Assembly (NCBI GenBank): GCA_009859145.1 | Contig: VRVR01000019.1 | Coordinates: 31,073-95,072 of the forward strand | Origin: Andalucia godoyi And28 | Taxonomy: Eukaryota > Protista > Jakobida | Length of the DNA stretch: 64,000 nucleotides | Direction: 5' to 3' | In this document: in pieces, positions 9,221 through 44,284 of the stretch | How positions within the stretch are numbered: position 1 is the stretch's first letter | Layout: each line of letters begins with the position of its first letter | Notes under the pieces: model-generated | The model's input: the letters and a program-made list of their open reading frames with translations, nothing else | The model's database searches: none | Told to the model about the DNA's origin: nothing | Program-made: the position numbers and the translations under genes

Positions 9221-9434
9221 CCGGCAGATGAATGACCTGGTGACGATACACGACGCGGTGCTCCACGCGAGCACCGTTGCATCATGTTGCTGCATCTCAG
9301 TCAGCGCTGTTCTTTTCATATATTTACAGAGTACGAAATGGCACAAGGAAAACAAGAACATCGACTCACAGAAGCACATGTGTCGAGAGAGAACAGGGGG
9401 GGGGGGGGGAAGACTAGCACAGCTGGGACATGAC

Positions 9435-9641: not shown

Positions 9642-9864
9642 GTCACCACCGCACCACTCGTGCTGCTCGAACGTGCCTATTTGTCCGGAAGGGTGACGAT
9701 TCGTTTTGTGCGATTCGGCAACTTGCCATCATTGAATTGGATGTTGGAAAAGAAGAAAAGAAAATATCATGTTAAAGGTGTTCATCGTTATCCGTTGATA
9801 GGGTTGCAGTTCTGTCTCGCGGGAAAATCCCAGATGTGTGCAAGCCGTTCGTGGATTCGGGTAT

Positions 9865-20600: not shown

Positions 20601-23092
20601 GAAAGATAAGAAATCGGACCGCTGTACTCACCGTGAATTCGCGGTTCGCCGTGCTTCACTTGATCACAGATTGGACGGCATCCAATCCCCAGAATTTTCT
20701 GAGGATGTCTCCTTTGCAAGAACTCCTCTATGATACCCCGATCGGTTTCATGCAGCAGCGAGGTTCCTTCTGTGCTGTCGAAATGGATCATATTCACGAG
20801 GCACCGATTCAAGCCGTCCGTCGTGATGGCTTCGATAAACTTCCCCACCGCCGTTCCCGGACCGCCATTGAGAACCACAATGGGCTTCTCAAGGAAGCTG
20901 GGTCCCAAAGCACGGAGTGCCGACCACACAGCTATGGGCCAGTCTACTCGGTTCACGCACTGCTCTTCCACCACCACTGCCAGCACCGGATCCAGCAACT
21001 TGCCGTCCTTGAGAATCGCAGGACGTCCCTGCAGAGATCGCATGTCCACTCCATTAGAATTGCAAATGGCGGGCATTCGAAGGCGCTTCATTGATTTGCC
21101 TTCAACGTGCCCCCAGATTTGGCGCAGTGCAGGTTCAACAACCGTGGAGTGAAAGGCCACAGTGGTCGGCAGCACCCGGACTCGAATGTCGGATCTTCCG
21201 AGCTGCTTGACACAGCGGAAAAACTGCTTGATTCCTTCGCAGGTTCCAGAGACGACAACGACGGAAGGAATATCCGCGTTTCCGATCCAACCAGGCGGTG
21301 TCAGTGTTTCCTGGTACACAGAAGACGCCTCCACGTTGATCAGCCCAATTTCAATGACCTCCTCCGCATCCAGCAGTCGACGAACTTCCAGCAAGACGTT
21401 TGTCACTTCTGGCACCGATAGGCCCACAATGCTTGCCATCGACATCTTTCCTGTGAACCGCTCAACAAGGTCAAACTGCTCATCGGATCGTGCCTTGGCA
21501 ATCTGACTCAGCGTCAGGTCATCTCCTGATTCTGGATCCCACCAGCTATCGACCTCCTGCATGTACCGGCCGTTTCTGACGAGCAAATCCAAAACATCGT
21601 CGTCCTCCACAGCCCCAACAGCATGGAGAACGAGCATCTGGCCTTGCGAATGTCCAAGAACAACTGCCTTGGACAGATCATACCCCATCGCCGCCAAGTG
21701 CACATTGATCGCAGCCTGTGTTAGCCCAATTAAAGGCTGCGAAAACTCCGCACGAATGAGTGCGTCTCCATCGTTCTGCATCAAGCCGTCGTCTGTCAGG
21801 ACAAACGATGCGTCGAGGTTGTGGAGTTCGAGGAGTCGCCGCATCTGCGTGTCAATGAAGCGACGCGCGGCAGGAGACGACTTGTGGAGTCTGCGCAGCA
21901 CAGGAACAAACTCGGACGCCTGGCCAGGCAGCGCATAGATGAAGTTCACTTTGTGCTCGTCGATGAGCTGCGCCAGTGCCGGTTTCGGTTCGGAGGCAGC
22001 TTGAAACAGCGAGCTGTCCTTTGCGATCAGGACCCAACCAATCACAAACGTTGTTGCATCTGCATTGTCTGAGGAGCACCACGACGCGGCAGCGGCACAC
22101 CCGTTGCCGCCCTCTCTTTCAACAAGGCACTTCATGGCATCTGCAGAAGATCCAGAGACGTCCAAGACTGCCGACGTGGCTGACAAAGACCGTGCAATGC
22201 GCACATGGTCATACACGTTCGCCATGAAATGCGGCTGTTGTCCTCCACCATAGTACGTAGCCTTGTAGAGACACTCTGCCAAACAGTGTTTCCAGACTGC
22301 ATTGTCATGGTCAAGCTGTGACGAACCGCTATGGTGATCTGCAGACGAGCGCACGACATCAATGCCGATACCAGCAAACGGGCATGTCGACGGAGCGACT
22401 GGAACAACCACCACTGCGATTCCCATGTTCCCATCATCTGCAAACGACGCAAGCAAGTCGCGACCACATTGGAGACTGTGGTTTCCGAATCGAACTGCGC
22501 GCTGGTACTGCGGCCTTGCGCTCGCTCCTTTGAATTCTCGTGCGTACTCGATGTCGCTCCAATTCGGGCTCTCTCCCAGCGACGATGCGAACGCCTCTTT
22601 TAACGCCACCTTGATCGACATTAGCCCTGCGATCCGCGAGTACAGCTTTCCATCTAACACCACCCGCACGCCCCCATCATCTCCACCATCATCATCATCA
22701 TCATCATTCTCATCACCCCCATCTTCAGCCTGACCTCGGTCCTGGCGGTCGGCGAGTCTGGAGCAGTACTCGCCGAGGTTGTCGAGGTTGCGCTCGGTGC
22801 GCGAAAACACCCTGCACAGCGACCGTTTGGGAATCGCAGTCCGTGGCGGCACATGTGCAGCCGCGAGTCCAAACCCGCTAAACGCGACTGCAACAACAAT
22901 CCGCGCGATCCCGAGCGCACTGTCCGGCGGCACAAACGACTGTACATGATGCAGCCCATCTCCCGCACTCGCACTCGCACCGTCGTCTCTGGATGCGATG
23001 CGCGGCCACAGAAGCGCAAACAGCGATGACTTCCACATCTTGCAAACCAGCGCTTCGGCAAGATCGGCGTCCTTTTGCGGCTCGAATGTCAT
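11639..23092 (-). CDS. fas: Single-chain microbial/fungal-type type I fatty acid synthase with N-terminal PPTase (PPT-AT-ER-DH-MPT-ACP-KR-KS), 3817 aa
   Basis: Intronless ORF with ordered motifs: GIGIDVV/LAECLYKA (PPT), LPGQ and GHSQG (AT), EGAEGGGH (FMN-type ER), DRQWLHTD...GVIVQG (MaoC DH), GHSLGQY and AFHS (MPT), LNLSSLEI (ACP), GGLGTIG and SPN...GGSGSYPFAK (KR), QACAT, SHSTGT and RHCLGG (KS Cys-His-His). Confidence 0.92.
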   Translation of the reverse strand: MTFEPQKDADLAEALVCKMWKSSLFALLWPRIASRDDGASASAGDGLHHVQSFVPPDSALGIARIVVAVAFSGFGLAAAHVPPRTAIPKRSLCRVFSRTERNLDNLGEYCSRLADRQDRGQAEDGGDENDDDDDDGGDDGGVRVVLDGKLYSRIAGLMSIKVALKEAFASSLGESPNWSDIEYAREFKGASARPQYQRAVRFGNHSLQCGRDLLASFADDGNMGIAVVVVPVAPSTCPFAGIGIDVVRSSADHHSGSSQLDHDNAVWKHCLAECLYKATYYGGGQQPHFMANVYDHVRIARSLSATSAVLDVSGSSADAMKCLVEREGGNGCAAAASWCSSDNADATTFVIGWVLIAKDSSLFQAASEPKPALAQLIDEHKVNFIYALPGQASEFVPVLRRLHKSSPAARRFIDTQMRRLLELHNLDASFVLTDDGLMQNDGDALIRAEFSQPLIGLTQAAINVHLAAMGYDLSKAVVLGHSQGQMLVLHAVGAVEDDDVLDLLVRNGRYMQEVDSWWDPESGDDLTLSQIAKARSDEQFDLVERFTGKMSMASIVGLSVPEVTNVLLEVRRLLDAEEVIEIGLINVEASSVYQETLTPPGWIGNADIPSVVVVSGTCEGIKQFFRCVKQLGRSDIRVRVLPTTVAFHSTVVEPALRQIWGHVEGKSMKRLRMPAICNSNGVDMRSLQGRPAILKDGKLLDPVLAVVVEEQCVNRVDWPIAVWSALRALGPSFLEKPIVVLNGGPGTAVGKFIEAITTDGLNRCLVNMIHFDSTEGTSLLHETDRGIIEEFLQRRHPQKILGIGCRPICDQVKHGEPRIHGEYSGPISYLSSVILQDDEQRREFINRVEKVLNLHDGDGETPSLWSEFLHHLGFDGRLPIAVAAMTGNNRAELVSSVAARGYLCFLAATTLGSDLEALTAEIREIHRRTQELLHSRGDPLWSEGRPFGANVIHGDPSGFYKLQVERILQAKVQEGIPIKIVSVAFSMITLADWKETYEPLLRAGIAILPLCENERRWEHFCNVIYPEVDRSLHHLLAFAPEGAEGGGHNIDRQNPSIRYGHSLAASLLDSAPPPYPWFMTGGQSTPSAIADALLVMANQPVRGGVQLGSLMQVALESAPPVQVKEFLAKAAFEGADAFVQCKSEFDRSINLIRNSFSEDLLELTVMLESKGSDEPIGAELGARTSTLFLREPVSQRKLLHRLWCASLTERNESRNKPLLTDVWPYWLSSDQEKLAAALSRLSRKQVISLFRSYRTWAIMEPDIDPQRSYVLGGRSIRSGMLALAAEGVDPFKYLLKPAHEILEDLRDRALEFLQKSYRLAMEIELSKNALQRRDPVLAAKRLQGVRVLHSDAHEWSCEIVAVPEADDWIRFLSSFGGRKTFNLADGIAEERVSASEFGVRKVSNPLRSAVRTFVGDVVCLRISDGTLREISVSSKEKRELIKITFDEHRSVFLEQWNLMDSTGRLFPVTWSYTVRRSIVGRTRVDVTNYSSTIDDLRSAYLGCWGCNMADGTTERVVADDVLRFHKSMGATSKRFVVRRLKSALVHPFFALHLAWKSLVQCALTSPFAIDFSRVVHSGQSFQSTGVALAEGDVVRVLSQVIRAQDLRAGREVQIWTVVVREPAGELVATLSSKFLSRCWDPSQFSSSQVLFEHLPPAQHSLEQCMCTEGSDALDVHVFSKEFSVSRSMMESYYLDRQWLHTDDRFANRCGLADGVIVQGWLLLLHVGHLFLEGFVGLEHIDRFVGFGESTAVVSPVAPGEQLLLDVRFSRLLQNNIECFSFVVVSRLDGKRKVQGTLLLRAFSSIAMFVGNASQRVGMASSLCETSPHAKARITSALNEIDSRLCKIVCDKESSRRTDEEYLNEVENSSCAIVATCVAYFENAQERGAPPPAYVVGHSLGQYTAAVISGALSLTDSLRIVRKRGLLLKEHCRGRIASVVKRSLMDLGVVLDTLQEVVASSPAFAHSVLEIANINCLSHDYSQVVISGDEDALHAAVKRFGALDYIVKVLPGNVAFHSSKLVAMEALLRDFIVSSTSISNPKIPMLSIVKPCYEDGSLRVLRTKEDVLEELVGMNSASVQWDGVMKTARRSGVLRFVEFGESSVLNNLARRIFSQDPEVRHASVSIGLEALIKTLISASADAVHPSEVPVVSEMKSIATVAANLVAPLAPALAPAPAPAPATATAAVPARSQAGSRQSLAVISPLQWCAIDLALSTCRIDAKGSAMLSPLLSDLSVIGSPSALVWAAIVTSLVDTNESIKLKDIVSSKRLANLNLSSLEITGLINQIRHRLNIAVPPSDHDAKELEGGTVDGIFSLMCRLWDHAFSSAPAKDGEQPWKDVSCSYKSLMNDHQVSGRTFFDLAKDGKVTVESEVFQTLYEQVCCRLVDPLSSTENLDYLMKRVENWKPQAEFKRESDNLRKVRTALFDRLRKQLTVHCARQEDAPLGISEDGVSAVPVSAVNVDALKKLVDDAIRERIAAGASSIPSKPLTQDSVILDMSTGCIIRNDAATADAHHAKKLLEKLSHELSASFISAMTHSWSARVHAAWSHSNLNSCCANALRLMEEVSSKNVEFDSDAYRYKVCHVSHQMDQTRCAWLSSLREFFVSRQDVARSRVCCDLLQHFENGCAVYLHWWEPFTIQSQSDGSRVSRPRAMPLPMVLSQWSDSNFVDSDTMSDVSKLVAGGMDLKGKRVLMLGGLGTIGKPTACVLLSLGADVWITTRSTFGDVEDTLREMRDEWAVCGASLHASTAFSPNYSNIDLLVGALQQLDWKPDIIMNAMASEDYGTISQRLDFFSVMYSLVEAFRYAVGKLLQWYREGEDEHSQPVLTVVNFSSPNDKFALGGSGSYPFAKASMPPGQWAMRRDSEGLYYTRDGSSRPMLREISLITGAVVPRVAAVSSSKAAKPTGIMSSFQHISDLLESVALEEFDTPLWVFDGADMAAIVVSLLNPSYGDQDVIGRCADGGFMRLDQVVVGGIQHVLNRTHAMAALEMHDAEDNENAADNPEVQKQRHVFEVGQVRSLVDYGFWIDELDGADAPYPMIDDEDIVVVGMGMVSSWGDSAISSFANVMDLQQSHFLRSEEDWPSFLGVLYVARAMGLAVEDGMTLDDVVHKFGKQIRANLGPRMLVRTGQRSDEYRRYHDYVGDDEILLGFRTELSSKLEKTSSSFDVSVFHHVERLLQSGYQLEERSVLGEKVVFARKEGASLSRMIIDAIGPQIVADIPPLDWSRLGGNLSIADHDARNILMGQLALTEACRMMGLVPREVTERHGAQNVCVLFSNGMGALETIRRQQQDCMRGMDVGQLGIVLSIPSAAAGRTASDQFGATGPATDDPQACATAKKTLWTAVQQMRSALRKAEDLEKRIGRYNSESMRLEVDRLRATALQKVMCVSCSDDGGTHECQNAFDRVGALLKASEADAKEFPPHRQCRPHDRDRVAKFQIGVGAGAMMLVTGWAVKRYGYRPVAVIRASECCSDGPTLEPDGKSRAWTGVGRFGQRKVFVDGLRDARLFGDVTLKDIYMMSSHSTGTGGDSIQSESFAIGAFLEALDWCMLQSCAGAENETVQQWVAQRTNRTVEDLRSSVASSNDILERSSRLAEQLNFSTSHTAQWISEIANLEAGMKRVLQIDNVRIFESHPKYNLRHCLGGTLTEDVLLLMSGMHRRTLPHPGLNNLEVSTASSPFSATLTKSTHVGATQPSRLRAGTLLQTGDRLRYCVAGNSFGFNGLDGFAIYEIPQALRFSSVDQARVWMLKAIQSEARSVALHRGTQSGKISALQYVQSDSCTTEDYEDLKEFDAAAFVQGMLEARGQQQACIPPWMTQ

Positions 23093-23608: not shown

Positions 23609-24084
23609 TCATCTTTTCGAGTGGGAGCGGACTGCGGAGCCCGTGGGTGCAATGGTGCTTGCGAGTCCGACGGGCGGTTTGGCCGCTCGTACTTCTGCGG
23701 CCCGCGTTCCTCCAGCAGTTCCCATCCCCTTCTTGAGCCCACCATGGACCGGCGCGATCTTTGCAGTCTTGCACGCAGGAATGTGCTTTTCTGCACTGAC
23801 GGCGTTGAACTTGCGGCCGCACGAAGGACATGCAACCCGGTCGTCCTGCGCCTTGATCATCTCGGCAACAGTCACACGCTCCTCGGCTGTCAGTCCGTCG
23901 TTCGCACCGCTTTCCGTCCCCTTTTGCCCGCGAATCATCGACAGGAACTGTGCTCGCTGCGCCTTCCACTTTGGAACAGCCTTCAGAGCCTTGCCTTCGC
24001 CGGATCCACCGCCTCCCGATCCAAAACCAGGTGGAACTTGGCCTCCTGCTGAAGACGATGCCTGCTGCTGCGGTGGTTTCCTGG

Positions 24085-24123
<39 letters not shown>

Positions 24124-25112
24124 GCAGTGCCGACGCTGATCCTGAACCTGATCCTGATCCTGATCCTGATGCGAGTGCTGCCTTTCGCGCTTCGAGACGC
24201 GCCTTCTTTTCTTCGGCCTCCTTTTCCTTTTGAACACGCGCAAGAAACTGTGCGGCTTCATCGCCTGCTGCTCCTGCCACACGGATCGCCGTCATGTCAA
24301 ACGCCTGTCGCTTCGACCCGAACACCTTTTGACACACTTTCTGATGCTTGGCAAGCCGGTCTGCCGCAAACGACCGTCCGCATTGACCACACTGCACAAG
24401 ATCAAGCGGTCCGTCTCCTTCCTCGGCATACTCGGACGGTTGCCCATATGCGTTTGCATTGGTATTGGAGTTGAAACTAGCGTGGGACTGGGAGTTGGAG
24501 TGCGAGTATCCGCCATGTCGACTGGACGATTCTTCTGGCTCCCGGTCATACTCGTCCTCTTCATACCGCGCATACTGCGACTGCGAACGTTGCTGGGGCT
24601 GGGGCTGGGGCTGGGGCTGTGGTTTTGCTTGTGGCTGGGCCCTGGGCTCCACCACCTTGGGCTCCACCTTGGGCTGGGTCTTGGGCTGGGTCTTGGGCTT
24701 TGCAGCAGGAGGCGGTGCGTCGTACGACGGCGGCACATCGTCGACGACATTCGACCACTCGGGCCGCGATGCAAGCCCAGCTGATGGCCCTCTTGCACTT
24801 GCTCGCGACCTTGCCGTCGCACCGGTTGCACTAGTTGTTGCACTGGCTGTTGCATTCGTACTTGTGACAGTGGCGGAGGGGGCGGAGGGGGCGGAGGACC
24901 CGTCATCCGAGTTCCATTCGGGTCGACGCGCCAATCGAGACTGATTCTCCTTGCCACTGGATCTCTTGGCCACGACATTCGGCTTCCTCCGCTCTTCGTA
25001 CGCATCCTCATTCTCGTACCCATTCTCACTCGCATACTCGCTCCCATTCTCGTTCTCGTACCCATATTCTTGCGCATGTCCGCGCCCCGAGTCATGGTAC
25101 TGCGAATGGGTA

Positions 25113-25151
<39 letters not shown>

Positions 25152-25972
25152 GGTGCATACGCCTCGACTTGATGCGGCGTCGGAACCGGCATCGGATACC
25201 CACGAAGCCTCGATGCAGACCTCTCGCTCGCACTGGATGACACCGCACCGCCGTTCCCACTGCCATTCACGCTCCCGTTCGCATTGACATTGACGTTCAG
25301 ATTCAGGACGGAGAGTGGCAACGGCCGGCCAAAAGAGTGCGGCGTCGACAGCAGCAGCCCATTTCCGCCGCCTGTGCTCACAATCGACACGGTCGCCGAG
25401 GAAGACGAGGACTCCCATGGAAGCTTTCCGCCGAGCGTGCGTGGGCGCTGCCGCGACTGGGAGGACGCCGAGGGCCGCTTCACCGCCTCCTGCAGCTCGG
25501 CCAGTCTGCTGCTGCTCCCCATTGCACCCCCAGACCCACCCGCAGACGCGGACGGCGGCAGATGAGATGCGGCATGGTGGCTGTTGCCAACGCTGGTCTG
25601 CGATCGGCTGTAGTCCGAGGCGATCGCATGGTAGTCAATGTCGCCGGGTGTCGAACGCTCTGCCATGTACTCGTGCAGCGCGTCGCGGGGACCCTGCGGG
25701 TGCTGCGATTGATGCTGGGACTGCTGCTTGGCGTGCGCAGGGCGAATGGACGGCGGTTGAGACTGCGCGCGCGGGAAGTGGGAACCCATCAGATCGTCCA
25801 GCGCATCCGCTTCTCTAGCATCACTTGATGCTGCTGCCGCAGCCGGTGGATGGCTCCCGTACGACGGGTCCAGCTTGCGTTGGTCCCGAAGTTCCTTGGC
25901 GCGCTCCAGGGCTTGCCGACGGCGCTCTGCATACTCGGCTGCCTGAGCAGACCCGCGTGTCGACAAGGACAT
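23609..25972 (-). CDS. ZC2HC1: C2HC zinc-finger protein (ZC2HC1/FAM164-like), 787 aa, with long low-complexity N-terminus
   Basis: Two zf-C2HC_2-type motifs: CGQCGRSFAADRLAKHQKVC and CPSCGRKFNAVSAEKHIPAC. Poly-Q and poly-N tracts are present. The first ATG is at 25972; the track start is GTG. Confidence 0.8.
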
Positions 25973-26222
25973 TTCCACACTCTCGAAAGGGGGGAGGGGT
26001 GCTACCTGTATGAAGGGAGAATAAAATAAAATAAATAGATGTACAAAAAAATATATATGTTAAAAGAAGAAATCAGTGAAGTGAATGAAAAATAAAAACA
26101 AAAAAAAACGAGTTCGAAAGAGGGTTTGATTGGTGCCTTTTGTTTTGTGTTTTCTTTTATTTTTTTGATAACGATCGAGAGCACTACAGCTGGCACAAGA
26201 CTGGCGGGGAATTTCTCCTTTT

Positions 26223-29200
26223 TTACAGAACAGAACATGCGGTTGATGCTGGAGCTGCGTTGTGCTCGAGATGCTGGATTCTGGCCTCAAGCGCTTCGAC
26301 TCGGCTTTTGAGGGCCTTGATGGCCTCTGTGAGGAGCGGCACGAGCTCGGGGATGTTTACAGCCGGCAGATCGCGGGACTTCATCACCTCGGCATAGTCG
26401 TTCTTCTCGGCCGTGCGCATATCTCGCTGCGCCTTCATCCGTTGCGCAAACAGCAGCTCCTCCTCCTCCTCCAGCTCCTCCTCCTCCAGCTTCTTCTCCT
26501 CCATCTTCTTCTTCTCGCTTGCTGTGGCCGTGGCCGCAACATTCGCAAACCGATTCTCGTTGGTGGAGCTTGATGGAAGCTTCTTCTTGCGCGAGACGGC
26601 CCAGGGAGCCGCAAGCTCGAGTTCCTCGGCAATGAACCCGACGTGCTGCTCATCAGTATCAGTAAGGCGGTACGTCACGCCTTGCATTTTCGCGACGGTG
26701 TCCAGCGCGTGCTCTGCAGAAATGTCATGAATGTCGTGCTTGATATGGACCGAGGACCAGATTGCCCAGCCTCCACGCGTCCAGATGATGCCGTCTTGAC
26801 CAACTGCGACGCGTGCATCCCAGGTGCTGGTGTCGGCGCGCCAGAGGAAAAAGGAAAAGTCAAGATCAGGGTCAATCGCAGGTGCCCAGATCGTCGGTCC
26901 GTTCGCATCTTCCCACCGCAGCGGCTTCGCGACCCCCGAGTTGTCAAGGCGCAGGACAGATGTCGGCTGGATGTGGTCTGTGGACGACAGGTACAGCACA
27001 GAGTCGCTCGTGGAGATCTGCGAAAGAGAGGACGACGTGATGTTCAGTGTACCAAGCATCAGCGTGTTCAGGCCTCCCGAAAACGAAAACACCGAATTCG
27101 GAGACGTGACGGAGAACGACAGCGCCGGCGCTGCGATGGTCGTCCGAGCACTTGACGGTGAATACGAGAGGAGCAGCGCCGCGGACGAGATCAGTGCAAG
27201 TGTGGACGAGGAGGTGGAAATCGTAGAGGACGCCGCATCCAGGCGCAGCGTGCTCGACGAAGAGGGCGTCCGAACATCCAGCGCACCAGACGTCGTGAAC
27301 ACCGAGACATGCGTGGCATTCAGATACAACGGGTCTGAAGGACTGGCAATCGTCGGGGTGGTGCTGCTCACGGTGCTCGCGGTCAGGAACAGGCGAGAGG
27401 AAACGTACACGCGGTTCGAATCGAGAATGATGTTGTTGGATGCCGTCGAGGTCGCAATGCGCAGGTCGGCAAGGACGGTTCGCGAGCGCAGAGTGTCAAA
27501 CAGCGCAGTCGACCCCATGAGGTACGGCGCGTTGATCAGTACGGCACCGGGAGACTGCAGCGAGATGTTGGAGGATGTCGACTGCAGCGCAAGGTCCAGC
27601 GATGATGAAAACTGCGCAGAAGCCCCGGAAACCTGGAACACGAAACTCCCGCTCACGGGCGCAGCAGAGAAGAGATGCGTCGACGGAGCAAGGCGTACTG
27701 CACCAGTCGACGACGCATCCAGAGTCACGTCGCCCGTCGTTGAAACGAGACGCATCGTCGCCATCGACACTTCGGATGCTTCGAGCGTCAGCACCGAAAG
27801 CGTCGATGTATTGCCAGAGCGGATCGTGAGAGCCTGGTTCGACCGCAGCACGATCGGGCTAGGCAGCGGTGAAGAAGAAGGTGGCACAAGGTCGATGAGC
27901 AGTGCTTGGAGATACAGCGTGCCAGACCCAGGCTCAATGCTCAGCGATGCCGATCCCAGTGGCACAGCAATACGCACAATCGAGTTTGCCGTCGCTGTGG
28001 TGAACGAAAACAGTGTTGCAGACGTGATCAAGGTCCCAGAGACAGGATCAATTGCAATGGGATCCATGGAGGAGTTGGACGCGATCCGCAGGCCATGTGA
28101 TGCCTCCAAAAGCCCTGCGTTTGGCGCAATGCGCACCTGGTGCGACGGGTCTGTGGTGGAGAGAAAGAACGCCGAATCAAGAATGCTGAGTGTCGTGGTG
28201 AAAGGAAGCAAAGACAGGCAAGACCCGGCACCTAGCGCGGTGCACATCGTGAACTGCGAGCGATCGGACGTGATTTGTGATCCTGAAATCGCAGTCTCAA
28301 ATCGAATAAACGATGAAGAACCGGAATCCGATACGAGCGAAAAGTCATTTGCGTACAGCATTGTTGACGAGCCAATCGTGAGCGAAACATCCGGGCTCGA
28401 CGTCGTGACATGGACCTCGGGTTCAGAGGACGCAATCGTCGCCAGGACAGGATCCAGTCCAAGAGTTGCGCCACCAGTCTGGGTCTGTCGGAGCAGCAGC
28501 TTCTGCGAAACCAGCGTCGTCGATCCGTCCAATTCAAGTCGCAGAGTCGAAAACGGGTTGGAAATGACAACGGGAGTGACAGAATCGTGCGAAACAATCG
28601 ATGCATTTCGGTGAATCTGAAGCATTCCCATGTCCAAAACATCTGCCCACACGGAAAACTGGTCCGTCGAACGAAGAATCGATTGCGCTGCCCCAAGGGA
28701 CAAGAAAGGCGACGACACAGAGTCTCCAAACTGCGTAATGAACGCATGCGATGCTTGTATGTACACGCTCGACGATGCATTCGACACATGCAAGTTTTCG
28801 CGAATCCACACATCGGTGGACAGCGCTACGCCTTGCAGCGAGGACAGCACAAGCTGCCGCGGACTCGTCACTTGCTGCACATCGAGAATCAGGGTTCCGG
28901 ACGCTGGAGTGATCTGAATGTCGCCGCCTGCATCCGAGCTTGTGGAAATGTTGAGAACGCCAGCCGTTGCGTTGAAGAGCGGAAACGCCCATTCGTTGCT
29001 TGGGACGTATGGCGCGGTTTCATTGCATGTACACACGTACTGAATGTTGTCTGATGGATCCGGGTCGACCCATGAGGACGATGAGTCGTTGGCGCTGCAC
29101 GACGAGATGTTACACAGCGCAAACGAACCGTTTGTTACATGGCTCCAGAGAGTGGAAGACAGGTTCGCGAGCAACCAGTCATAATCGATGGATCCCGTGC

Positions 29201-30845
29201 AGCTGGCATTGCAGCTCGCCGTGGCGTTACTGGACCCGATATACTGGGAAAAGTCAAGTGAATTGATGTACGCAGTGAGGTTCGCGATCACCGTATCAAG
29301 GTCGACAGGGAGCAGAGGAGACGACCCATTGCCATTGTAGTAATTATTGACGACGGTGACGACAGACTGGTTAACGACTGTCACGACTGTCTGGTTGACG
29401 ATCGACAAGTTGAGCAATCGCAAATTGCTCATGACGTGCTCCGTCACATTGGCCACAATCGCGTCAAACATTGAATCGTCCAATGTGGTGTTGCCCCCGA
29501 TCGTCTGATAAATAATTGTCGTCGTCGAGGACGCACTGCCATTGGCAAAAAAGTTGGAAACCGAGCTGCTGTTGAGACATGCGTATGCCGACGTGTTGAT
29601 CTGTTGAAGCCCGTAATCGCCGAGCTGCGATGTGTCCGAGCCGATCGCTCCGTGCGGCACAAAACACAGCGGGCCGTGGACATAGACACGCGAGCCTGTC
29701 GGACCTGGAACCAGGTGCACATCCGGATTCACCTCGTTGTCCCGGTTATCCAGCAGCACCCCGGACCCTCGCTTTGACGACCGTATCACAAATGCATTGG
29801 AATTGGAATTGGCATTGGCATTCGCGCTATCCCGACGATGCACCCCAGCCGGTCGCAACAGAGACGAAGAAGCAGAAGAAGCAGAAGTCGAGGAGGGCGA
29901 GGAAGCGGAAGAGTTGGAGGATGTCAGAACGAGGTCCTTTGAAGCGACAATGTCGACGTCGAACGATATGGCAAGCGGGTCAAAAGAGAGCGCGCGATGG
30001 CCTGCAATGGCGATGCCCTGTTCGTCGACTTGGATTCGATTGGCGATGGACAGCGCGCTCTGGACCTTAAGCCGCCGCGCAGACACGGTCTCGTCGATCT
30101 GCAAGTTCCCAGCAACTGTCCAGTCCGATGCGAGGATCCGCACAGTCGAAAACGTCACGAGCGCACTCACCAGCAGAAACACAAAGACCGAAAGCGTCGT
30201 TAGCAACAAGCACATTCTCCACCGCTTTCTCGTCTTTGCTGCCGCTGCCGCTGCAGCAGCCGAGGAAGACTGCTTCTCGGCGTCGGTCAGCAAGAATGCG
30301 GAAGAGACACGTCTTGTCAGGTCCATCATAGTATTGGGATCGTGACTGCCGGTGCTGGGCGAGAGAGGGTTGGTGGTGATGGCCGGCACCTGTTGCATGG
30401 GAGCAATGGGCGATTTGAGGGCAGGGTCGCCAAAAGGCACGGTGCGTAATGTGATGCGTCGTCCAAGAGGAGCAAAGCCGGAGAGTCGCGGCAGGTCTGA
30501 CGGACCGTGCCCGGACGTCGCCTTGTGGCTTGCATTTACATTCGCCAGCTGTACAGAATGCAAGAACGACTCGGCGTGATTCTCGGTGGAGGAATGACGG
30601 TGATGGCTGTCCTTGTCCTTGTCCTTGTCCTTGTCCTTGACTTTGTGGAGGTCCGCAGCCACTAGTACCTTGTCTGACTCGGCTTCGGTCTCGGACTGGT
30701 GTTCGGGATCGAGATCGGGATCGGGATCGGAAACGGACATTGAGCGTGACCTTGACTGTGACACTGACTGCAAATGTGTCGGAATTGGACCTTCCGAGTC
30801 GCTTTCGGAGGCCGCAAAGTCCGACGCCGAATGATAGCCGGACAT
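26223..30845 (-). CDS. Type II membrane tail-fibre-like protein with C-terminal peptidase S74 (intramolecular chaperone auto-processing) domain, 1540 aa
   Basis: First ATG at 30845. A disordered N-terminus is followed by KTRKRWR and a TM helix (~30142-30215), then a long Ser/Thr/Leu beta-rich region. The C-terminus has WSSVHIKHDI...GVTY...HVGFIAEEL...VNIPELVPLLTEAIKAL and a coiled coil. Confidence 0.85.
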   Translation of the reverse strand: MSGYHSASDFAASESDSEGPIPTHLQSVSQSRSRSMSVSDPDPDLDPEHQSETEAESDKVLVAADLHKVKDKDKDKDKDSHHRHSSTENHAESFLHSVQLANVNASHKATSGHGPSDLPRLSGFAPLGRRITLRTVPFGDPALKSPIAPMQQVPAITTNPLSPSTGSHDPNTMMDLTRRVSSAFLLTDAEKQSSSAAAAAAAAKTRKRWRMCLLLTTLSVFVFLLVSALVTFSTVRILASDWTVAGNLQIDETVSARRLKVQSALSIANRIQVDEQGIAIAGHRALSFDPLAISFDVDIVASKDLVLTSSNSSASSPSSTSASSASSSLLRPAGVHRRDSANANANSNSNAFVIRSSKRGSGVLLDNRDNEVNPDVHLVPGPTGSRVYVHGPLCFVPHGAIGSDTSQLGDYGLQQINTSAYACLNSSSVSNFFANGSASSTTTIIYQTIGGNTTLDDSMFDAIVANVTEHVMSNLRLLNLSIVNQTVVTVVNQSVVTVVNNYYNGNGSSPLLPVDLDTVIANLTAYINSLDFSQYIGSSNATASCNASCTGSIDYDWLLANLSSTLWSHVTNGSFALCNISSCSANDSSSSWVDPDPSDNIQYVCTCNETAPYVPSNEWAFPLFNATAGVLNISTSSDAGGDIQITPASGTLILDVQQVTSPRQLVLSSLQGVALSTDVWIRENLHVSNASSSVYIQASHAFITQFGDSVSSPFLSLGAAQSILRSTDQFSVWADVLDMGMLQIHRNASIVSHDSVTPVVISNPFSTLRLELDGSTTLVSQKLLLRQTQTGGATLGLDPVLATIASSEPEVHVTTSSPDVSLTIGSSTMLYANDFSLVSDSGSSSFIRFETAISGSQITSDRSQFTMCTALGAGSCLSLLPFTTTLSILDSAFFLSTTDPSHQVRIAPNAGLLEASHGLRIASNSSMDPIAIDPVSGTLITSATLFSFTTATANSIVRIAVPLGSASLSIEPGSGTLYLQALLIDLVPPSSSPLPSPIVLRSNQALTIRSGNTSTLSVLTLEASEVSMATMRLVSTTGDVTLDASSTGAVRLAPSTHLFSAAPVSGSFVFQVSGASAQFSSSLDLALQSTSSNISLQSPGAVLINAPYLMGSTALFDTLRSRTVLADLRIATSTASNNIILDSNRVYVSSRLFLTASTVSSTTPTIASPSDPLYLNATHVSVFTTSGALDVRTPSSSSTLRLDAASSTISTSSSTLALISSAALLLSYSPSSARTTIAAPALSFSVTSPNSVFSFSGGLNTLMLGTLNITSSSLSQISTSDSVLYLSSTDHIQPTSVLRLDNSGVAKPLRWEDANGPTIWAPAIDPDLDFSFFLWRADTSTWDARVAVGQDGIIWTRGGWAIWSSVHIKHDIHDISAEHALDTVAKMQGVTYRLTDTDEQHVGFIAEELELAAPWAVSRKKKLPSSSTNENRFANVAATATASEKKKMEEKKLEEEELEEEEELLFAQRMKAQRDMRTAEKNDYAEVMKSRDLPAVNIPELVPLLTEAIKALKSRVEALEARIQHLEHNAAPASTACSVL

Positions 30846-31235: not shown

Positions 31236-31278
31236 TTATTCGCATTTACACTTTACTAAAAGTATAGATAGTTGGGCC

Positions 31279-32196
31279 ATGTCGTCGTCCCGAGCACCAG
31301 CGCCCGTGGCAGCGCCCGTGGCAGCGCCTCGTCGTACGCTTACGTTTGCGGAGCAGCTTTTTGCGGGCGGTGTGGCTGGCGTGACGGAGATTGTGTGTGC
31401 GTTTCCATTGGATGTTTTGAAGACGCGTCAGCAGATCAGTGTTGGGAAGGACGTAAACATGTTCCGTGCGCTTGGGGAGATGGTGAAGAAGGAGGGGTTC
31501 AAGATGTACCGGGGGATTGCGGCCCCGATCATGATTGAAGCGCCGAAGCGGGCGATCAAGTTCAGTGCGAATGCGCAGTACAGTCCATTGTGGATGTCTG
31601 TGCTGGGGGTGTCGAAGCCTACGCAGGTGTCATCGGCGCTGGCTGGTGTTTCTGCGGGTCTGACAGAGGCGGTTGTGATTGTTCCTTTTGAGCTTATCAA
31701 GATCCGCATGCAGAACCCGGCGTACCAAGGCATGTACAGCTCGACGACGGACTGCATCCGAAAGGTGGTTGCGCAGGAGGGGCTATCGGCGCTCGTTGTG
31801 GGGATGGAGGCGACGCTGTGGAGGCATGCTGCATGGAATGGAATGTACTTTGGATCGATCTTTGCGGTCAAGGCACGGCTGCCAGAGGCACGGTCAAAGG
31901 GCGCAAAGCTGTGGTGGGACTTTGTCGCTGGATCCGTCGCTGGAACCCTCGGAACAATGCTCAACACTCCTTTTGACGTCGTCAAGTCGCGCAGACAAAA
32001 CGCTCTCAAGGGCGGAGACAAGCTCAAGTACAACTGGACCCTCCCCGCCGTCGCAACCATTGCACAGGAAGAAGGCATCGCTGCCCTCTACAAGGGCTTC
32101 GGCGCAAAAGTCGCGAGACTTGGGCCGGGCGGCGGCGTCCTGCTCCTCGTGTTCAACGTCATCTCGGATTTCCTCACTGCCCCCAAACACCACTGA
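31279..32196 (+). CDS. SLC25A21: Mitochondrial carrier, 2-oxodicarboxylate carrier (ODC/SLC25A21)-like, 305 aa
   Basis: Three PxDxxKxR-type signatures (PLDVLKTR, PFELIKIR, PFDVVKSR), plus ODC-typical EAPKRAIKF, WRHAAWN and RLGPGGG. ATG at 31279. Confidence 0.88.
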   Translation: MSSSRAPAPVAAPVAAPRRTLTFAEQLFAGGVAGVTEIVCAFPLDVLKTRQQISVGKDVNMFRALGEMVKKEGFKMYRGIAAPIMIEAPKRAIKFSANAQYSPLWMSVLGVSKPTQVSSALAGVSAGLTEAVVIVPFELIKIRMQNPAYQGMYSSTTDCIRKVVAQEGLSALVVGMEATLWRHAAWNGMYFGSIFAVKARLPEARSKGAKLWWDFVAGSVAGTLGTMLNTPFDVVKSRRQNALKGGDKLKYNWTLPAVATIAQEEGIAALYKGFGAKVARLGPGGGVLLLVFNVISDFLTAPKHH

Positions 32197-32374: not shown

Positions 32375-35300
32375 TTAACGAATGACACGCAGCGAATTGG
32401 AGACATTTCGCATGGGAATGATGGGGACTTCGGGCATGGTGGAAGCGTCGGTCCAGCATCGCTCGAGCGTTGGGCCAAAGCAAATGCGCAACGCGACAGC
32501 AGCATGCTGTGTAGGAGACATGACCGGTGCAGAAACGAGGCGCGATCTCGCATCAAACGTGCGGATTGTACCCGCAGACACAATGACCTTGGGGCCAATG
32601 GAAACGAAAACGCCTTCGCTGAGAATCGCAGACGTGGAGTTCACCTGCTGATCGATGCGCATCAGTACGCTGGAGCCGCCAGCAGCAAGAATGCCGTTTG
32701 CAGACAGAGAGAGCACAGACGCAAAATCCACAACCTGGATAAGCGCAGGGGCTGCAGACGCGGCGGTGGATACCGACGGCGAGAGCGCAGATTGCACAAC
32801 AAGCGGTCCGAGCGCTGGCCCGGTAAAGCGGAACAAGCACAGCAGCAGTGCATCAGACACGACGAGAACATCAGTCGTTTGCGGCGGACTGCCAGCTGCA
32901 CTCGATCCGATCTGGCAAAACGAGTCGCCGGATGCCGGAGCAGCAAAGGAGGAAAAGTGCACACCGGAAACTGGTACGAGAAAATGAACAGAGAAGTCGG
33001 CAGTAGGAAACACGGTGCTAGTCAGACCAAGAACCTGCGGCGCAGACCTCAGCTCGATCTGCAGCTGCACGTCTAAATGCTGGTTGTGTCTCCACAGAGA
33101 AAGTCCAACCGGCACGAAACCAGACGAGACCGTAGACAGCGCAGAATAATCGCAGTCCCATCGATCCATCTTGACGAACCGCGAGTCAAATGCCTCCGAG
33201 ACAAGAGACGAAACACAGTACATAGGATGCGACCAGCCAAGAGAACTGGACTCAGAAAAAGACGGAGGCGACAAGATAAACGAGAACGGAACAACAAGCG
33301 GGACAGGCGACGCGCGAACAAGAAGAGGAGAAAACGACGAAACAAATGACACATTGAACACGAAACCCATCGCAGACTGAGATAAAAGAGAGGCACGAGA
33401 TGCAAAGGAGAGAGAAACACCGACTGGATTGAAGGAGGCGTCAGAAAGAACAGTCTCCGAAACACAACACAGTCCTGAAAACGCCATCCGGAACGGGCTC
33501 ATCACCGACCGTCTTGACACCGGGAAGCACTTGCCCGCCCTGTATGACGGACTTACCGCCACCCCAAACCCGTACATTCCTCGTTTTTCAAGAACGTCCA
33601 CATACTCCATGCTGCCGCCATCCAACACACTCCCACCATTCGTGCCGTAAATGTCACGACCATCGCACTCCGACTCCACTCGCACTCGCTTGATCTCAGG
33701 TCGCACATGCGCATCCTTCCGATGCGTCACCCACAAAGACACTTCATCGTCCAGTAAGAAATCCCGTCGCGAAACCACGGCCGTGCACTGCACCAACGCA
33801 CTCGACACAAACAACACCGATGACGAAAACTGCGAGCCCCCTTGTCCGTCCCACCCGTCCCATCCGTGCGAAGCATCCACACTTTCAAATCCGCAAGAGT
33901 CATGCGGTCGGAACTGCGAGCCTTGCACTGTCACCGTGAACGCAGACCCAGTCACAACCATCTCTGGAATCACAGACCACACGCGCGACGCACCCACCAC
34001 CTCCACTGCAGCATCCATCGGCAGCATGTCTACCGCAGAAAACGTCTCCTGGTGGAACTGCACCACGGCAAATCCATGCGCTACGCCGTCGGCTTTGCAA
34101 CCCACAGAACTTGGCAATCGGATCATCGACGCCTGCATCATGCTGCCGCCTCCAAATGTGCAGAAGACATCCCCAGTCGGAATCCCGCGAGCAAGCACGT
34201 CCGCCGAAAACGACACTGAAAAGTACTCCATCTCCGCCGCACTATACAGCGGATCCACAACCGCATACGACGACATGTTCGCCAGCGGCACATACGACCG
34301 AACAACGCCCTGTGGAGACCCCTGCACCGCCGCAAAATACCGGCCACTGTCCACCGACCATGAAATGTCGTAGTCCTGGTTTTCCTGCATCGACGGCACT
34401 CCGAACTCCTCCTCTCCATCCGCGTCGCTCAGTCTCGCCGACACCGTTTTCCCGAACCGCAGCCGCATCCGGACACTCTGCATCGTCGCTGGCACACGTC
34501 GCGCACGAACCCCGCCCGAAGTACCGAAATACGGCACATGCAAATCTGCTGTGTCCAGGTTCACTGCCGATCCCTCAGCTGCATACACGTCCAGCACCGC
34601 AGACTGGCTCCATCCGCCAGAGAAATCGAACCCGTTGACGGACACATCCAACGCACACCGACCCCCCAGCCCCGATCCTCCTGGCTGTCCGTTTCGCCCA
34701 ACAGACCCATCTCCAGCCAGAATATCGTCCACCGAGCCCAGTTGCGACTCCATCGACGCCGGCGACGACAGCGGAGGTGTCACCACCAACCACAGAGACG
34801 AGCACAGAACATACACATCCGATGCCCCTGCCGTCTGCAGACTACCAAACACCGACAGCCTCACTTGCCGCAGAGACGCTCCAATCGCCGTGCTGCTTCC
34901 AGACACTCCCCCCGCGACGCTGTAGTCAACCATCTCGCGCCCGCTGATTGTCACAAGCTGGCCGCCCTCCACTGCGATGCTTTTCGGAAACACCCCCAGC
35001 AGCACCGGTCGCTCTCGCACCAGCACCGACGTACTCTCTGCTTCCCCGGGATTGTCGCGCCCAATCGTCAGACCGATAGGGACAAACCCGCTGCGTCCGG
35101 TAATCGCCCAAAATCCCAGCTGCGATCCCTCAGGACCAGGAAGCACCTGGTCAGACAGAATCCGGTCTCCAAACCACACATACACCCAGCTTCCCGCGAC
35201 GAACTCCGATCCAACGACAAGCAGGCTGTCCCGTGCGTCCGGGTGCAGCACAACTGAAGACGATCCGGAGACCCACGGAGCCGTCGCACGAGCGATGCTC

Positions 35301-43789: not shown

Positions 43790-44284
43790 TACTGGTATTC
43801 TGCCCAAATCGTGCGGCCCACTCTCTCGATCACTCGCTTAAACTTATGAATCACTCGGCTCCACTATTAATGCTAATAACAGCAACAATCCTTATTAGCT
43901 TTTAAAAATAATAATAATATCAAAAAACAGTAATAACATAAATTGAAGACGAGTCCTTTGGTTTTTGGAAGGATATTGAAAAACGGGGGGGGGGGGAAAT
44001 CTCACGAATTCCGCCTGTCGTATGCGATGCCCATGGAGGCTGAAAACAGGGGCATTGACATGGCTTGAAAGGTCCAGCCTCAAGCACTACTTTTTTTCAG
44101 AATCTACTGTAAGTCAGGGGGGGTGGGGCGGTGAACTACGGTGCGTTTAAAGGTCGAAGCAGCATTTAGTGTTTCTTATTTTCATTATTTCCACAAGGTT
44201 TTTTTCTGTATGTTGTTGTGGTGTAGAAGATAGTAGGAATAGAAAAAGAAGAAGAAACAGCAGTGGTAGTGATTTTGGAGGGAG

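What the first reader, a model, noticed from the sequence alone, without database searches (positions are those of the whole stretch)
26223..30845. Membrane-anchored phage-tail-fibre-like protein with a self-cleaving S74 chaperone: a possible prey-capture fibre
Seen: cytosolic-type N-terminus, basic patch plus a single TM, about 1,150 aa of short beta-strand-like Ser/Thr/Leu repeats with many N-x-S/T sequons. Then WSSVHIK (Ser 26754-26756, Lys 26739-26741, the S-x4-K dyad spacing), GFIAEE and a terminal coiled coil. Known: S74/ICA domains trimerise phage tail spikes from the C-terminus and cleave themselves off. Bdellovibrio uses S74-containing trimeric fibres for prey recognition. The familiar eukaryotic S74 protein MYRF has the ICA before its TM, the opposite topology. 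Inference: a eukaryotic cell-surface trimeric fibre assembled like a phage tail fibre, perhaps an adhesin for bacterial prey.
Basis: partly seen in the sequence, partly recalled or inferred. Interest (0 to 1): 0.78.

Follow-up and report, generated by a model that had tools for sequence, protein, structure and literature searches.

The report
Membrane-anchored phage-tail-fibre-like protein in a jakobid
A bacteria-eating flagellate, Andalucia godoyi, has its own gene for a membrane-anchored surface protein that looks built and matured like a phage tail fibre, with the self-cleaving S74 chaperone at its outer end; what it binds is unknown.

Summary
Window 26223-30845(-) is one uninterrupted 1540-aa ORF. 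It has a hydrophilic N-terminus, a basic patch plus a single TM helix (aa 204-235), and a Ser/Thr/Leu-rich all-beta ectodomain. A Pfam Peptidase_S74 domain (E 4e-9) carries the Ser1364/Lys1369 dyad at the stated coordinates, followed by a heptad helix.

The neighbouring gene is letter-identical to published AgMC22, so the window is Andalucia godoyi nuclear DNA.

The whole architecture recurs in three other sequences: a Stygiella incarcerata transcript, a 1702-aa protein from run SRR15116022, and a metagenome fragment. The gene has host-like codon usage, ordinary cellular neighbours and no viral relatives, so it is a cellular gene family.

The modelled C-terminus matches the MyRF and endoNF chaperone structures and 196 viral, mostly phage, fibre proteins. 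Phage tail-fibre profiles also match about 150 aa upstream of the cleavage site.

Best reading: a type II, N-in/C-out trimeric surface fibre. The S74 domain would nucleate folding, then cut itself off at W1363|S1364 and expose the distal tip.

Not shown:
- trimerisation
- cleavage
- localisation
- any link to prey

The stalk model was uninformative (pLDDT 39).

I rate it a new variant of a known kind, with moderate to high interest.

The parts
26223..30845 (-). Complete intron-less CDS, 1540 aa plus stop, of the S74 fibre-like protein
   Evidence: RSCU correlation with neighbouring genes is 0.85-0.89.
30225..30845 (-). Cytosolic N-terminal region, aa 1-207. It is hydrophilic and acidic/Ser-rich, has no signal peptide, and holds only 1 of the 28 sequons.
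30432..30512 (-). Invariant cytosolic family motif GHGPSDLPRLSGFAPLGRRITLRTVPF (aa 112-138)
   Evidence: Alignment A1. Also present in P0047 and twice in P0002. It occurs only once in the window and has no Pfam match.
30141..30236 (-). Basic patch KTRKRWR (aa 204-210) plus a single TM helix (aa 211-235); signal-anchor, N-in
   Evidence: The only Kyte-Doolittle peak. Flank charge is positive on the N-side in all three full-length family members.
29661..29726 (-). Conserved proximal ectodomain block PDVHLVPGPTGSRVYVHGPLCF (aa 374-395)
   Evidence: A1. The same block is on metagenome contig L002.
28944..29597 (-). Lineage-specific insert rich in N-x-S/T sequons and Cys (aa 417-634). It is largely absent from the Stygiella homologue.
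26757..28928 (-). Ser/Thr/Leu-rich all-beta shaft (aa 640-1363). The last ~150 aa (aa 1214-1363, 26757-27206) fall within the match to phage tail-fibre family phrog_1980 (aa 1214-1431).
26754..26759 (-). Predicted scissile bond W1363|S1364. Ser1364 is the nucleophile.
   Evidence: S1364 aligns with the invariant Ser of SDxxxK. In endoNF and MrfA, cleavage is N-terminal to that Ser.
26739..26741 (-). Lys1369, general base of the Ser-Lys dyad (S-x4-K)
   Evidence: Invariant column in A3; role as described
26583..26756 (-). S74/ICA core (aa 1364-1421), including GFIAEELELAAP
   Evidence: Pfam. AF2 pLDDT is 86-98 here. Foldseek: 7dc3 at E 1.4e-4 with probability 1.0 and 3gw6 at E 0.04; 196 viral hits.
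26379..26582 (-). Charged, low-complexity insert (aa 1422-1489) between the S74 core and the last helix. Only the three eukaryotic proteins have such an insert, 60-150 aa long against 5-20 aa in phage and bacterial relatives.
26265..26378 (-). Terminal heptad helix of the chaperone domain (aa 1490-1527)
   Evidence: Aligns with the last helix of phage ICA domains; pLDDT 97-98

Best explanation
This is a native nuclear gene of the jakobid Andalucia godoyi. It encodes a type II (N-in, C-out) single-pass membrane protein whose roughly 1,300-aa outside part is built like a phage tail fibre.

Proposed mechanism:
1. [quoted passage not shown]
2. Three chains are brought into register by the C-terminal S74/ICA domain. 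That domain trimerises and nucleates folding of the beta-stranded shaft from the C-terminal end.
3. Once the shaft is folded, Ser1364, activated by Lys1369, cuts the chain between W1363 and S1364. This releases a 177-aa chaperone fragment.
4. The mature fibre stays anchored in the membrane by three TM helices. Its newly exposed C-terminal tip, the part homologous to phage fibre tips, points away from the cell. Phage fibres have the same geometry: their N-terminus is fixed to the tail and their C-terminus binds the receptor.
5. The three cytoplasmic tails present the invariant GxGPxDLP...RRITLRTVPF motif to an unknown intracellular partner. The fibre is therefore probably a receptor or sorted surface appendage, not an inert coat.

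Status of the steps:
- Shown: the domain content, the intact dyad, the family conservation, and the cellular origin.
- Inferred: orientation (positive-inside rule, sequon distribution), trimerisation, cleavage, surface display.
- Unknown: the ligand.
For: - Domain identity: Pfam S74 is above its curated cut-off. The Ser/Lys dyad is invariant across 32 homologues. The modelled C-terminus matches the MyRF ICA (7dc3, probability 1.0), the endoNF ICA (3gw6) and 196 viral, mostly phage, ICA-bearing proteins. Profile searches against PDB hit the T5 L-shaped fibre, the S16 long tail fibre tip and MyRF.
- Fibre homology: eight PHROG tail-fibre families match. phrog_1980 covers aa 1214-1431. In the Stygiella homologue the matches reach about 250 aa upstream of the cleavage site.
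- Topology: there is a single TM helix, with charge bias positive on the N-side in all three full-length members. 27 of 28 sequons lie on the C-side.
- Shaft: only beta strands are predicted, with a lag-9 hydrophobic periodicity in all three proteins.
- Cellular, conserved gene: the neighbour is A. godoyi AgMC22. Codon usage is host-like. The same architecture occurs in Stygiella transcripts, so it is expressed there, and in two other sequences.
- Mechanism in known relatives: S74 trimerisation and self-cleavage are documented for endoNF, MrfA/MYRF and Bd3182.
Against: - There is no direct evidence here for trimer formation, cleavage or surface location.
- The AF2 monomer model of the ectodomain is of no use (mean pLDDT 38.8). 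The shaft could therefore be something other than a trimeric beta-helix.
- The second motif residue is Ser, not the usual Asp (SSxxxK against SDxxxK). A 68-aa charged insert interrupts the chaperone domain. Either could affect activity.
- The orientation rests on rules of thumb.
- Only four family members were found among billions of proteins, so conservation statistics are thin.
Confidence: 0.6

Rival explanations
1. One reading: the fibre is an adhesin that captures bacterial prey, with the distal tip binding bacterial surface glycans as in phage fibres and Bdellovibrio MAT proteins. This is a more specific form of the best explanation, not an alternative structure.
For: - A. godoyi is cultured on live bacteria as food, and Stygiella is also a free-living jakobid.
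- S74 fibres of phages and of Bdellovibrio bind bacterial surfaces.
- The tip region is homologous to phage fibre tips.
- The conserved cytosolic motif would suit a receptor coupled to uptake.
Against: - There are no binding, localisation or expression data.
- The MAT capping-loop motif is absent.
- There is no family expansion or tip diversification of the kind seen in Bdellovibrio (21 MATs). Only one copy was detected for A. godoyi in the window and in the protein collection.
- The family was not found in other bacterivores.
Confidence: 0.22
2. A structural surface element rather than a prey receptor: a protease-resistant trimeric coat, a flagellar vane or hair component, a substrate-attachment fibre or a cyst-surface protein. 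The cytosolic motif would serve sorting or anchorage to the cytoskeleton.
For: - S74-matured trimers are known for extreme stability.
- The A. godoyi copy has a heavy sequon load.
- The family is single-copy with little tip diversification.
- The invariant cytosolic motif is compatible with a targeting signal.
Against: There is nothing specific. The motif does not fit the ciliary RVxP/VxPx signals (own reading, note 5). No localisation data exist.
Confidence: 0.2
3. The S74 domain is retained only as a trimerisation or folding module and no longer cleaves, so the chaperone stays attached at the fibre tip.
For: - The motif is SSxxxK instead of SDxxxK in all three members.
- A large eukaryote-specific insert lies inside the chaperone domain.
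- Non-cleaving fibre ends exist in Bdellovibrio (NS74 MATs), although those lack the S74 domain altogether.
Against: - Ser and Lys are invariant across proteins that are only 27-30% identical overall, which argues for selection on catalysis.
- The residue before the Ser varies (W, P, T), just as it does between endoNF (T) and MRFs (P).
Confidence: 0.1
4. The gene is a fibre gene of an integrated virus (polinton-like virus, virophage or giant virus), or a bacterial or phage contaminant, not a cellular gene.
For: S74-terminated fibre genes are common in polinton-like viruses inserted in protist genomes, and one giant-virus protein is among the fold matches.
Against: - The flanking genes are ordinary cellular genes: a zf-C2HC protein and the published mitochondrial carrier AgMC22 431 bp away. 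No viral hallmark genes appear among the window's large ORFs.
- Codon usage is host-like.
- The scan of IMG/VR found no relative.
- Homologues in other organisms share the TM anchor and cytosolic motif, which a virion fibre would not need.
Confidence: 0.04
5. A MYRF-like membrane-tethered regulator, in which S74 cleavage releases a signalling fragment.
For: MYRF and MrfA are the only characterised cellular eukaryotic S74 proteins and are also type II membrane proteins.
Against: - No Ndt80-type DNA-binding domain and no MRF C-terminal domains were found.
- The S74 domain is at the extreme C-terminus, on the other side of the membrane from the cytosolic tail. Cleavage therefore cannot free the cytosolic part.
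Confidence: 0.03

Closest known systems
Phage tail fibres and tailspikes with a C-terminal intramolecular chaperone (K1F endosialidase endoNF, PDB 3gw6; T5 L-shaped fibre pb1, PDB 4uw8/8hqz; S16 long tail fibre, PDB 6f45)
   Same: - A C-terminal S74/ICA domain with a Ser-x4-Lys dyad, and a terminal heptad helix.
- A beta-stranded shaft immediately upstream that shares sequence homology (PHROG tail-fibre families, E down to 1e-13).
- The N-terminus is the attachment end and the C-terminus is the distal end.
   Different: - Encoded by a eukaryotic nuclear gene.
- The N-terminal attachment is a TM helix with a ~200-aa cytosolic tail, not a tail or baseplate adaptor.
- The motif is SSxxxK rather than SDxxxK.
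- A 68-aa charged insert lies inside the chaperone domain.
- The protein must fold in the secretory pathway.
Bdellovibrio bacteriovorus MAT (mosaic adhesive trimeric) fibres of the S74 subgroup, e.g. Bd3182 (PMC10769870)
   Same: A cellular (non-viral) organism that preys on bacteria displays a long (~1000 aa), S74-terminated fibre on its own surface, anchored at the N-terminal end.
   Different: - MATs have a signal peptide and a conserved ~130-aa beta-rich N-terminal domain. Here there is a eukaryotic signal-anchor with a conserved cytosolic motif.
- The MAT/MYRF capping-loop motif VG(G/N)-pi-xxPxxxL is absent.
- MATs form a 21-member family with diverse tips. Here only one copy was seen.
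MYRF / Dictyostelium MrfA membrane-bound transcription factors
   Same: A eukaryotic, type II membrane protein with an ICA domain. The best solved-structure match of the model is the MyRF ICA (7dc3). Its profile E-value (1.9e-4) is similar to that of the phage T5 fibre (5e-5).
   Different: - In MYRF the ICA lies before the TM, on the cytosolic side, and releases an Ndt80-type DNA-binding trimer.
- Here the ICA is the extreme C-terminus on the extracytoplasmic side.
- There is no DNA-binding domain.
- The upstream partner of the ICA is still a fibre shaft.
S74-terminated fibre proteins of polinton-like viruses and giant viruses in protist genomes (PMC12220804)
   Same: Large modular proteins found in protist genome assemblies, ending in Peptidase_S74.
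   Different: - Those sit in viral elements. They combine laminin-G, collagen or adenovirus-fibre modules and have no TM anchor.
- This gene has cellular neighbours, host-like codon usage, a TM anchor and a cytosolic motif conserved between species.

Membership tests
[quoted passage not shown] | Sequence match to PF13884 above the curated threshold | tested here: met
   37 bits against a cut-off of 22, E 4.1e-9, aa 1367-1414. Homologues P0002 and P0012 also pass.
[quoted passage not shown] | Catalytic Ser and Lys five residues apart (S-x4-K) | tested here: met
   S1364 and K1369 are invariant columns in 32 aligned homologues. The second residue is Ser rather than the common Asp.
[quoted passage not shown] | ICA fold (beta-hairpin core plus C-terminal helix) | tested here: met
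   The AF2 core has pLDDT 86-98. Foldseek gives 7dc3 at probability 1.0 and TMt 0.67, and 3gw6 at E 0.04. There are 196 viral ICA proteins at E<=1e-3. This is a monomer model only.
[quoted passage not shown] | Homotrimerisation | not testable with these tools
   No multimer prediction was available. The terminal helix has heptad spacing (direct reading).
[quoted passage not shown] | Autoproteolysis N-terminal to the Ser | not testable with these tools
   Needs protein chemistry. The predicted site is W1363|S1364.
Phage tail fibre / tailspike | Shaft homologous to phage fibre families | tested here: met
   Eight PHROG tail-fibre families match. phrog_1980 covers aa 1214-1431. tblastn hits fall on annotated tail-fibre genes.
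Phage tail fibre / tailspike | Encoded in a viral genome next to tail or virion genes | tested here: not met
   Neighbours are a zf-C2HC protein, mitochondrial carrier AgMC22, RIO1 kinase and others. There is no relative in IMG/VR.
MYRF / MrfA membrane-bound transcription factors | Ndt80-type DNA-binding domain N-terminal to the ICA | tested here: not met
   The Pfam scan of the whole protein at E<=1 finds only S74 and a sub-threshold TM-region hit.
MYRF / MrfA membrane-bound transcription factors | ICA upstream of the TM helix (cytosolic side), with MRF C-terminal domains after it | tested here: not met
   The TM is at aa 211-235 and the ICA at aa 1364-1540. No MRF_C domains were found.
Bdellovibrio MAT fibres | Capping-loop motif V-G-G/N-pi-x-x-P-x-x-x-L near the tip | tested here: not met
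   A regex search of the window protein, P0002 and P0012 found none.
Bdellovibrio MAT fibres | Signal peptide followed by a conserved ~130-aa beta-rich N-terminal domain | tested here: inconclusive
   There is no N-terminal signal peptide. A ~207-aa hydrophilic tail and a signal-anchor stand in its place. No MAT sequence was compared directly with the juxtamembrane region.
Polinton-like-virus / giant-virus fibre proteins | Located inside a viral element, with modular laminin-G, collagen or adenovirus-fibre domains | tested here: not met
   No such Pfam domains, cellular neighbours, host-like codon usage.

The most novel reading that the evidence does not exclude
The protein is a phagocytic prey receptor made from a captured phage receptor-binding protein. 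The trimeric tip, exposed by S74 self-cleavage, would bind bacterial surface polysaccharide. The three clustered cytosolic RRITLRTVPF motifs would couple binding to engulfment in the feeding groove. It would also be a second use of the phage ICA domain by eukaryotes. Whether it was acquired independently of MYRF was not resolved here. Unlike MYRF, it is still in its original fibre context.
Probability: 0.15. Interest if true: 0.9.

Novelty: new variant of a known kind. Interest (0 to 1): 0.62.

Why it matters
S74/ICA domains are known in four settings:
- phage fibres
- bacterial fibres (Bdellovibrio MATs, contractile injection systems)
- viral elements in protists
- eukaryotic cells, but only in the heavily repurposed MYRF transcription factors

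In the papers searched, I found no cellular eukaryotic protein that keeps the whole phage logic (shaft plus C-terminal self-cleaving chaperone) and hangs it from a eukaryotic membrane anchor with a conserved cytoplasmic tail.

If confirmed, it would matter in three ways:
- It would show that a eukaryote can fold a phage-type interdigitated fibre in its secretory pathway.
- It would offer a comparison point, not yet placed phylogenetically, for how MYRF came by its ICA domain.
- It would give a concrete candidate for the almost unknown molecular basis of surface recognition in excavate bacterivores.

It also defines a small new protein family with an unexplained invariant cytosolic motif.

Tried and rejected
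1. Word-indexed homology searches:
   - The full-length query returned only the query itself.
   - The 141-aa C-terminal query returned nothing.
   - The low-complexity shaft saturates the candidate list. The profile search A2 also failed to return P0002 and P0012, but it did add fragment P0047.
2. phmmer of the whole protein against PDB found nothing. Profiles were needed.
3. Exact-sequence look-ups of the window protein and of its neighbour found nothing.
4. The organism was identified instead by finding the neighbour's protein sequence in a paper's supplement.
5. The scan of metagenome contigs with A2 gave one S74-only locus (L003) and no new family member. The IMG/VR scan gave none.
6. Self-BLASTP for internal repeats found none, so the 'repeats' wording was rejected.
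7. tblastn of the ectodomain against the window found no paralogue.
8. AF2 of aa 238-1425 with a 3-sequence alignment gave pLDDT 38.8 and was unusable. It was not sent to fold search.
9. tblastx of the window against L001/L002 for synteny was uninformative because the flanks are too short.
10. Codon usage of the P0002 gene resembles A. godoyi (r 0.82), but this does not decide whether it is a paralogue or another species.
11. A literature search for SRR15116022 found nothing.
12. Rfam and tRNA scans of the window found nothing.
13. Known short motifs for the cytosolic block were considered and rejected: PP1 RVxF (Pro at an excluded position), calcineurin LxVP, ciliary RVxP/VxPx, and 14-3-3 modes I and II. 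RRITL fits the textbook basophilic-kinase pattern, but this is only a reading from memory.

Full report
**What is in the sequence**

The minus strand from 30845 to 26223 is one uninterrupted reading frame of 1540 codons. The frame stays open upstream to 31019, but the first ATG is at 30845.
- WSSVHIK is aa 1363-1369.
- Ser1364 is at 26754-26756 and Lys1369 at 26739-26741.
- GFIAEE begins at aa 1403.

The protein begins with about 200 hydrophilic, acidic/Ser-rich residues and has no signal peptide. The basic run KTRKRWR (aa 204-210) follows, then the only strongly hydrophobic stretch (aa 211-235). After the helix the composition changes to S 18%, L 11%, T 9%, A 9% and V 8%, with almost no Lys or Glu.

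Self-BLASTP finds no internal sequence repeats, so the 'repeats' are a compositional and structural regularity. Hydrophobic autocorrelation is negative at lags 3-4 and positive at lag 9. The two full-length homologues show the same pattern.

There are 28 N-x-S/T sequons against 16.6 +/- 3.4 in shuffles, and 27 of them lie on the C-terminal side of the helix. They cluster in aa 417-634, an insert that the Stygiella homologue largely lacks. The enrichment is weak in P0002 (20 against 15.0 +/- 3.3) and absent in Stygiella.

**The S74 domain is real**

- Pfam Peptidase_S74 matches aa 1367-1414 at E 4.1e-9, with 37 bits against a curated cut-off of 22.
- In an alignment of 32 S74 C-termini, three eukaryotic and 29 phage- or bacteria-like sequences from the exhaustive search, the only invariant columns are S1364, K1369, G1403, A1406 and P1414. 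The catalytic dyad described for endoNF (S911/K916), MrfA (S767/K772) and Bd3182 (SDxxxK) is therefore intact.
- An AF2 model of aa 1240-1540 built on that alignment is confident exactly over the S74 core and the last helix (pLDDT 86-98) and poor elsewhere.
- In the PDB its best matches are the MyRF ICA domain (7dc3, E 1.4e-4, probability 1.0, TM 0.67 on the target) and then the endoNF chaperone (3gw6, E 0.04).
- In BFVD it matches 196 viral proteins at E <= 1e-3. Nearly all of those that carry a name are ICA-bearing tail fibres of tailed phages, and one is a giant-virus protein.
- The terminal 'coiled coil' is the canonical last helix of the chaperone domain. Phage relatives align to both the core and this helix with only 5-20 residues between them. 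The three eukaryotic proteins carry a charged insert of 60-150 residues there.

**Homology to phage fibres goes beyond the chaperone**

Eight PHROG families, all annotated as tail fibre, match. phrog_1980 covers aa 1214-1431, which reaches about 150 residues upstream of the predicted cleavage site. In the Stygiella homologue the matches reach about 250 residues upstream. tblastn against phage genomes gives weak hits (E down to 1e-4), all but one on annotated tail-fibre genes.

**Whose gene it is**

The window is eukaryotic. It holds a mitochondrial carrier, a RIO1 kinase, a UVB_sens protein, EF-hand and zf-C2HC proteins, and several very large intron-less ORFs.

The carrier gene at 31276-32196(+) lies 431 bp from the start of the fibre gene. 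It is letter-identical to AgMC22 (gene model _00712.mRNA.1) in Additional file 1 of the Andalucia godoyi genome paper (PMC7050145). The window is therefore nuclear DNA of the jakobid flagellate A. godoyi. That genome is about 20 Mb, compact and largely intron-free. The organism is grown on live bacteria as food.

The fibre gene's codon usage correlates with its neighbours (RSCU r 0.85-0.89). There are no viral genes around it. A scan of IMG/VR found no relative. It is not a polinton-like-virus fibre of the kind reported in other protists.

An exhaustive HMMER search of 1.84 billion representative proteins gave only 35 hits at E <= 1e-3. Most are S74-only matches. Two share the whole architecture:
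- P0012 and its isoforms, transcripts of Stygiella incarcerata, an anaerobic jakobid.
- P0002, a 1702-aa protein on a 6.7-kb contig from run SRR15116022, organism unknown.

A profile search added a metagenome fragment, P0047, with the same N-terminal module. The next ORF on its contig holds the next conserved block.

Overall identity is only 27-30%, yet these blocks are conserved:
- a cytosolic motif GxGPxDLP-x(5-8)-(A/L)Px(G/S)RRITLRTVPF (window aa 112-138; two copies in P0002)
- a basic patch plus TM helix
- a juxtamembrane block W..(V/T).G.L....TV
- a block P.(V/I)(H/N)(L/V)VP..G......G..C(F/Y)
- a shaft of variable length
- SSxxxK...G(F/Y)IAEEL.L..P
- the terminal helix

The cytosolic motif has no Pfam match and fits none of the short linear motifs I checked (note 5). 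Outside the S74 core it is the best-conserved stretch of the protein.

**Topology**

In all three full-length members the N-side flank of the helix is net positive (+3 to +4 over the 15-residue flanks scored). The C-side flank is neutral or negative. With no signal peptide and a helix more than 200 residues from the start, this is a signal-anchor with the N-terminus in the cytosol and the C-terminus outside. The sequon distribution in the A. godoyi protein agrees. The orientation is an inference from rules, not a measurement.

**How it most likely works**

S74 domains documented elsewhere trimerise, act as a folding nucleus and folding sensor for the upstream beta-structure, and then cut N-terminal to the Ser. 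Applied here:
1. Three chains inserted in the ER are registered by their C-terminal ICA domains.
2. The shaft folds.
3. The chain is cut at W1363|S1364, and a 177-aa fragment leaves.
4. The mature trimer remains anchored by three TM helices, with the phage-like tip distal.

Type II orientation is exactly what a phage fibre needs in order to be displayed from a eukaryotic membrane, because phage fibres are attached by their N-terminus and bind by their C-terminus. The three clustered cytoplasmic tails would present the invariant motif to a partner.

I put 0.6 on this structural and mechanistic picture. The ligand is unknown.

**What could not be settled**

- The monomer AF2 model of aa 238-1425, built on three sequences, has mean pLDDT 38.8 and shows essentially only short strands. 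It neither supports nor refutes a trimeric beta-helix, and no multimer tool was available.
- Cleavage, trimerisation, localisation and expression in A. godoyi are untested. Expression is shown only for the Stygiella homologue, as transcripts.
- The prey-capture idea rests on lifestyle and analogy. The MAT/MYRF capping-loop motif is absent. No paralogue was found in the window or in the protein collection, unlike the 21 MAT genes of Bdellovibrio.
- A structural or sorting role (coat, vane or hair, attachment, cyst) is about as likely as a prey-capture role.

**Comparison with what is known**

The protein works like a phage tail fibre or a Bdellovibrio S74 MAT fibre. It is a member of the S74/ICA domain family by sequence, dyad and fold.

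It is not a member of the MYRF family: it has no Ndt80 domain, and its ICA lies on the other side of the membrane at the extreme C-terminus. It is not a viral fibre by context.

A family-only profile is about equally distant from the T5 fibre (5e-5) and from MyRF (1.9e-4) in the PDB. The origin relative to MYRF therefore remains open.

In the held literature, S74 is discussed for phages, Bdellovibrio, contractile injection systems, polinton-like viruses and MYRF/MrfA. No paper links it to jakobids or to a TM-anchored cellular fibre.

**Verdict**

- Observation: confirmed.
- Novelty: a new variant of a known kind, namely a phage-type S74 fibre adopted as a eukaryotic type II membrane protein with its own conserved cytoplasmic motif.
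- Interest: 0.62.
- Most novel reading not excluded: a phage-derived phagocytic prey receptor, probability about 0.15.

Noticed in passing
window 30432-30512 (-), aa 112-138 of the fibre protein; also P0002 (two copies), P0012, P0047 / L002 270-980: An invariant cytosolic motif GxGPxDLP...RRITLRTVPF is shared by all four family members. It has no Pfam match and its partner is unknown. RRITL resembles a basophilic-kinase site (my reading, untested).
   Followed up: partly
window 31276-32196 (+): This mitochondrial carrier gene is identical to published AgMC22 (2-oxodicarboxylate-type carrier, model _00712.mRNA.1) of Andalucia godoyi. This identifies the organism of the window.
   Followed up: yes
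window 32378-43807 (-) and 55419-63989 (-): Two giant intron-less ORFs (3810 and 2857 aa) have IPT/TIG domains. The second also has a weak ephrin-receptor-like match. They are probably further very large surface proteins close to the fibre gene.
   Followed up: no
window 11642-23092 (-): A 3817-aa intron-less ORF in which Pfam recognises only an acyltransferase (Acyl_transf_1) domain at aa 1808-2048. It may be a divergent PKS/FAS-like megasynthase.
   Followed up: no
window 23612-25978 (-): A 789-aa protein with two zf-C2HC_2 fingers and long poly-Q, poly-N and GS tracts lies directly downstream of the fibre gene, with a 245-bp spacer.
   Followed up: no
window 26824-28614 (+): A 596-aa antisense ORF lies wholly inside the fibre CDS. 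It is most likely a by-product of the Ser/Thr-rich codon composition, not a gene.
   Followed up: no
P0002 aa ~600-790 (L001 479-5587): The homologue from SRR15116022 has three tandem ~55-aa shaft repeats (…SPHINASGTISFSTGASFA…). The A. godoyi protein has none, so shaft length evolves by repeat gain and loss.
   Followed up: no
window 1-10000: The first 10 kb are lower in G+C (44-48%) than the rest (50-61%). The ORFs there (1614-3143, 8892-9902) have no Pfam match and atypical codon usage (RSCU r 0.42-0.46).
   Followed up: no
L002 (JGI metagenome 3300043542, contig Ga0485819_017939) 270-1273: The family member on this contig is split into two overlapping called genes (270-980 and 977-1273). 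This may be a frameshift or assembly error, or a much shorter juxtamembrane region than in A. godoyi.
   Followed up: partly
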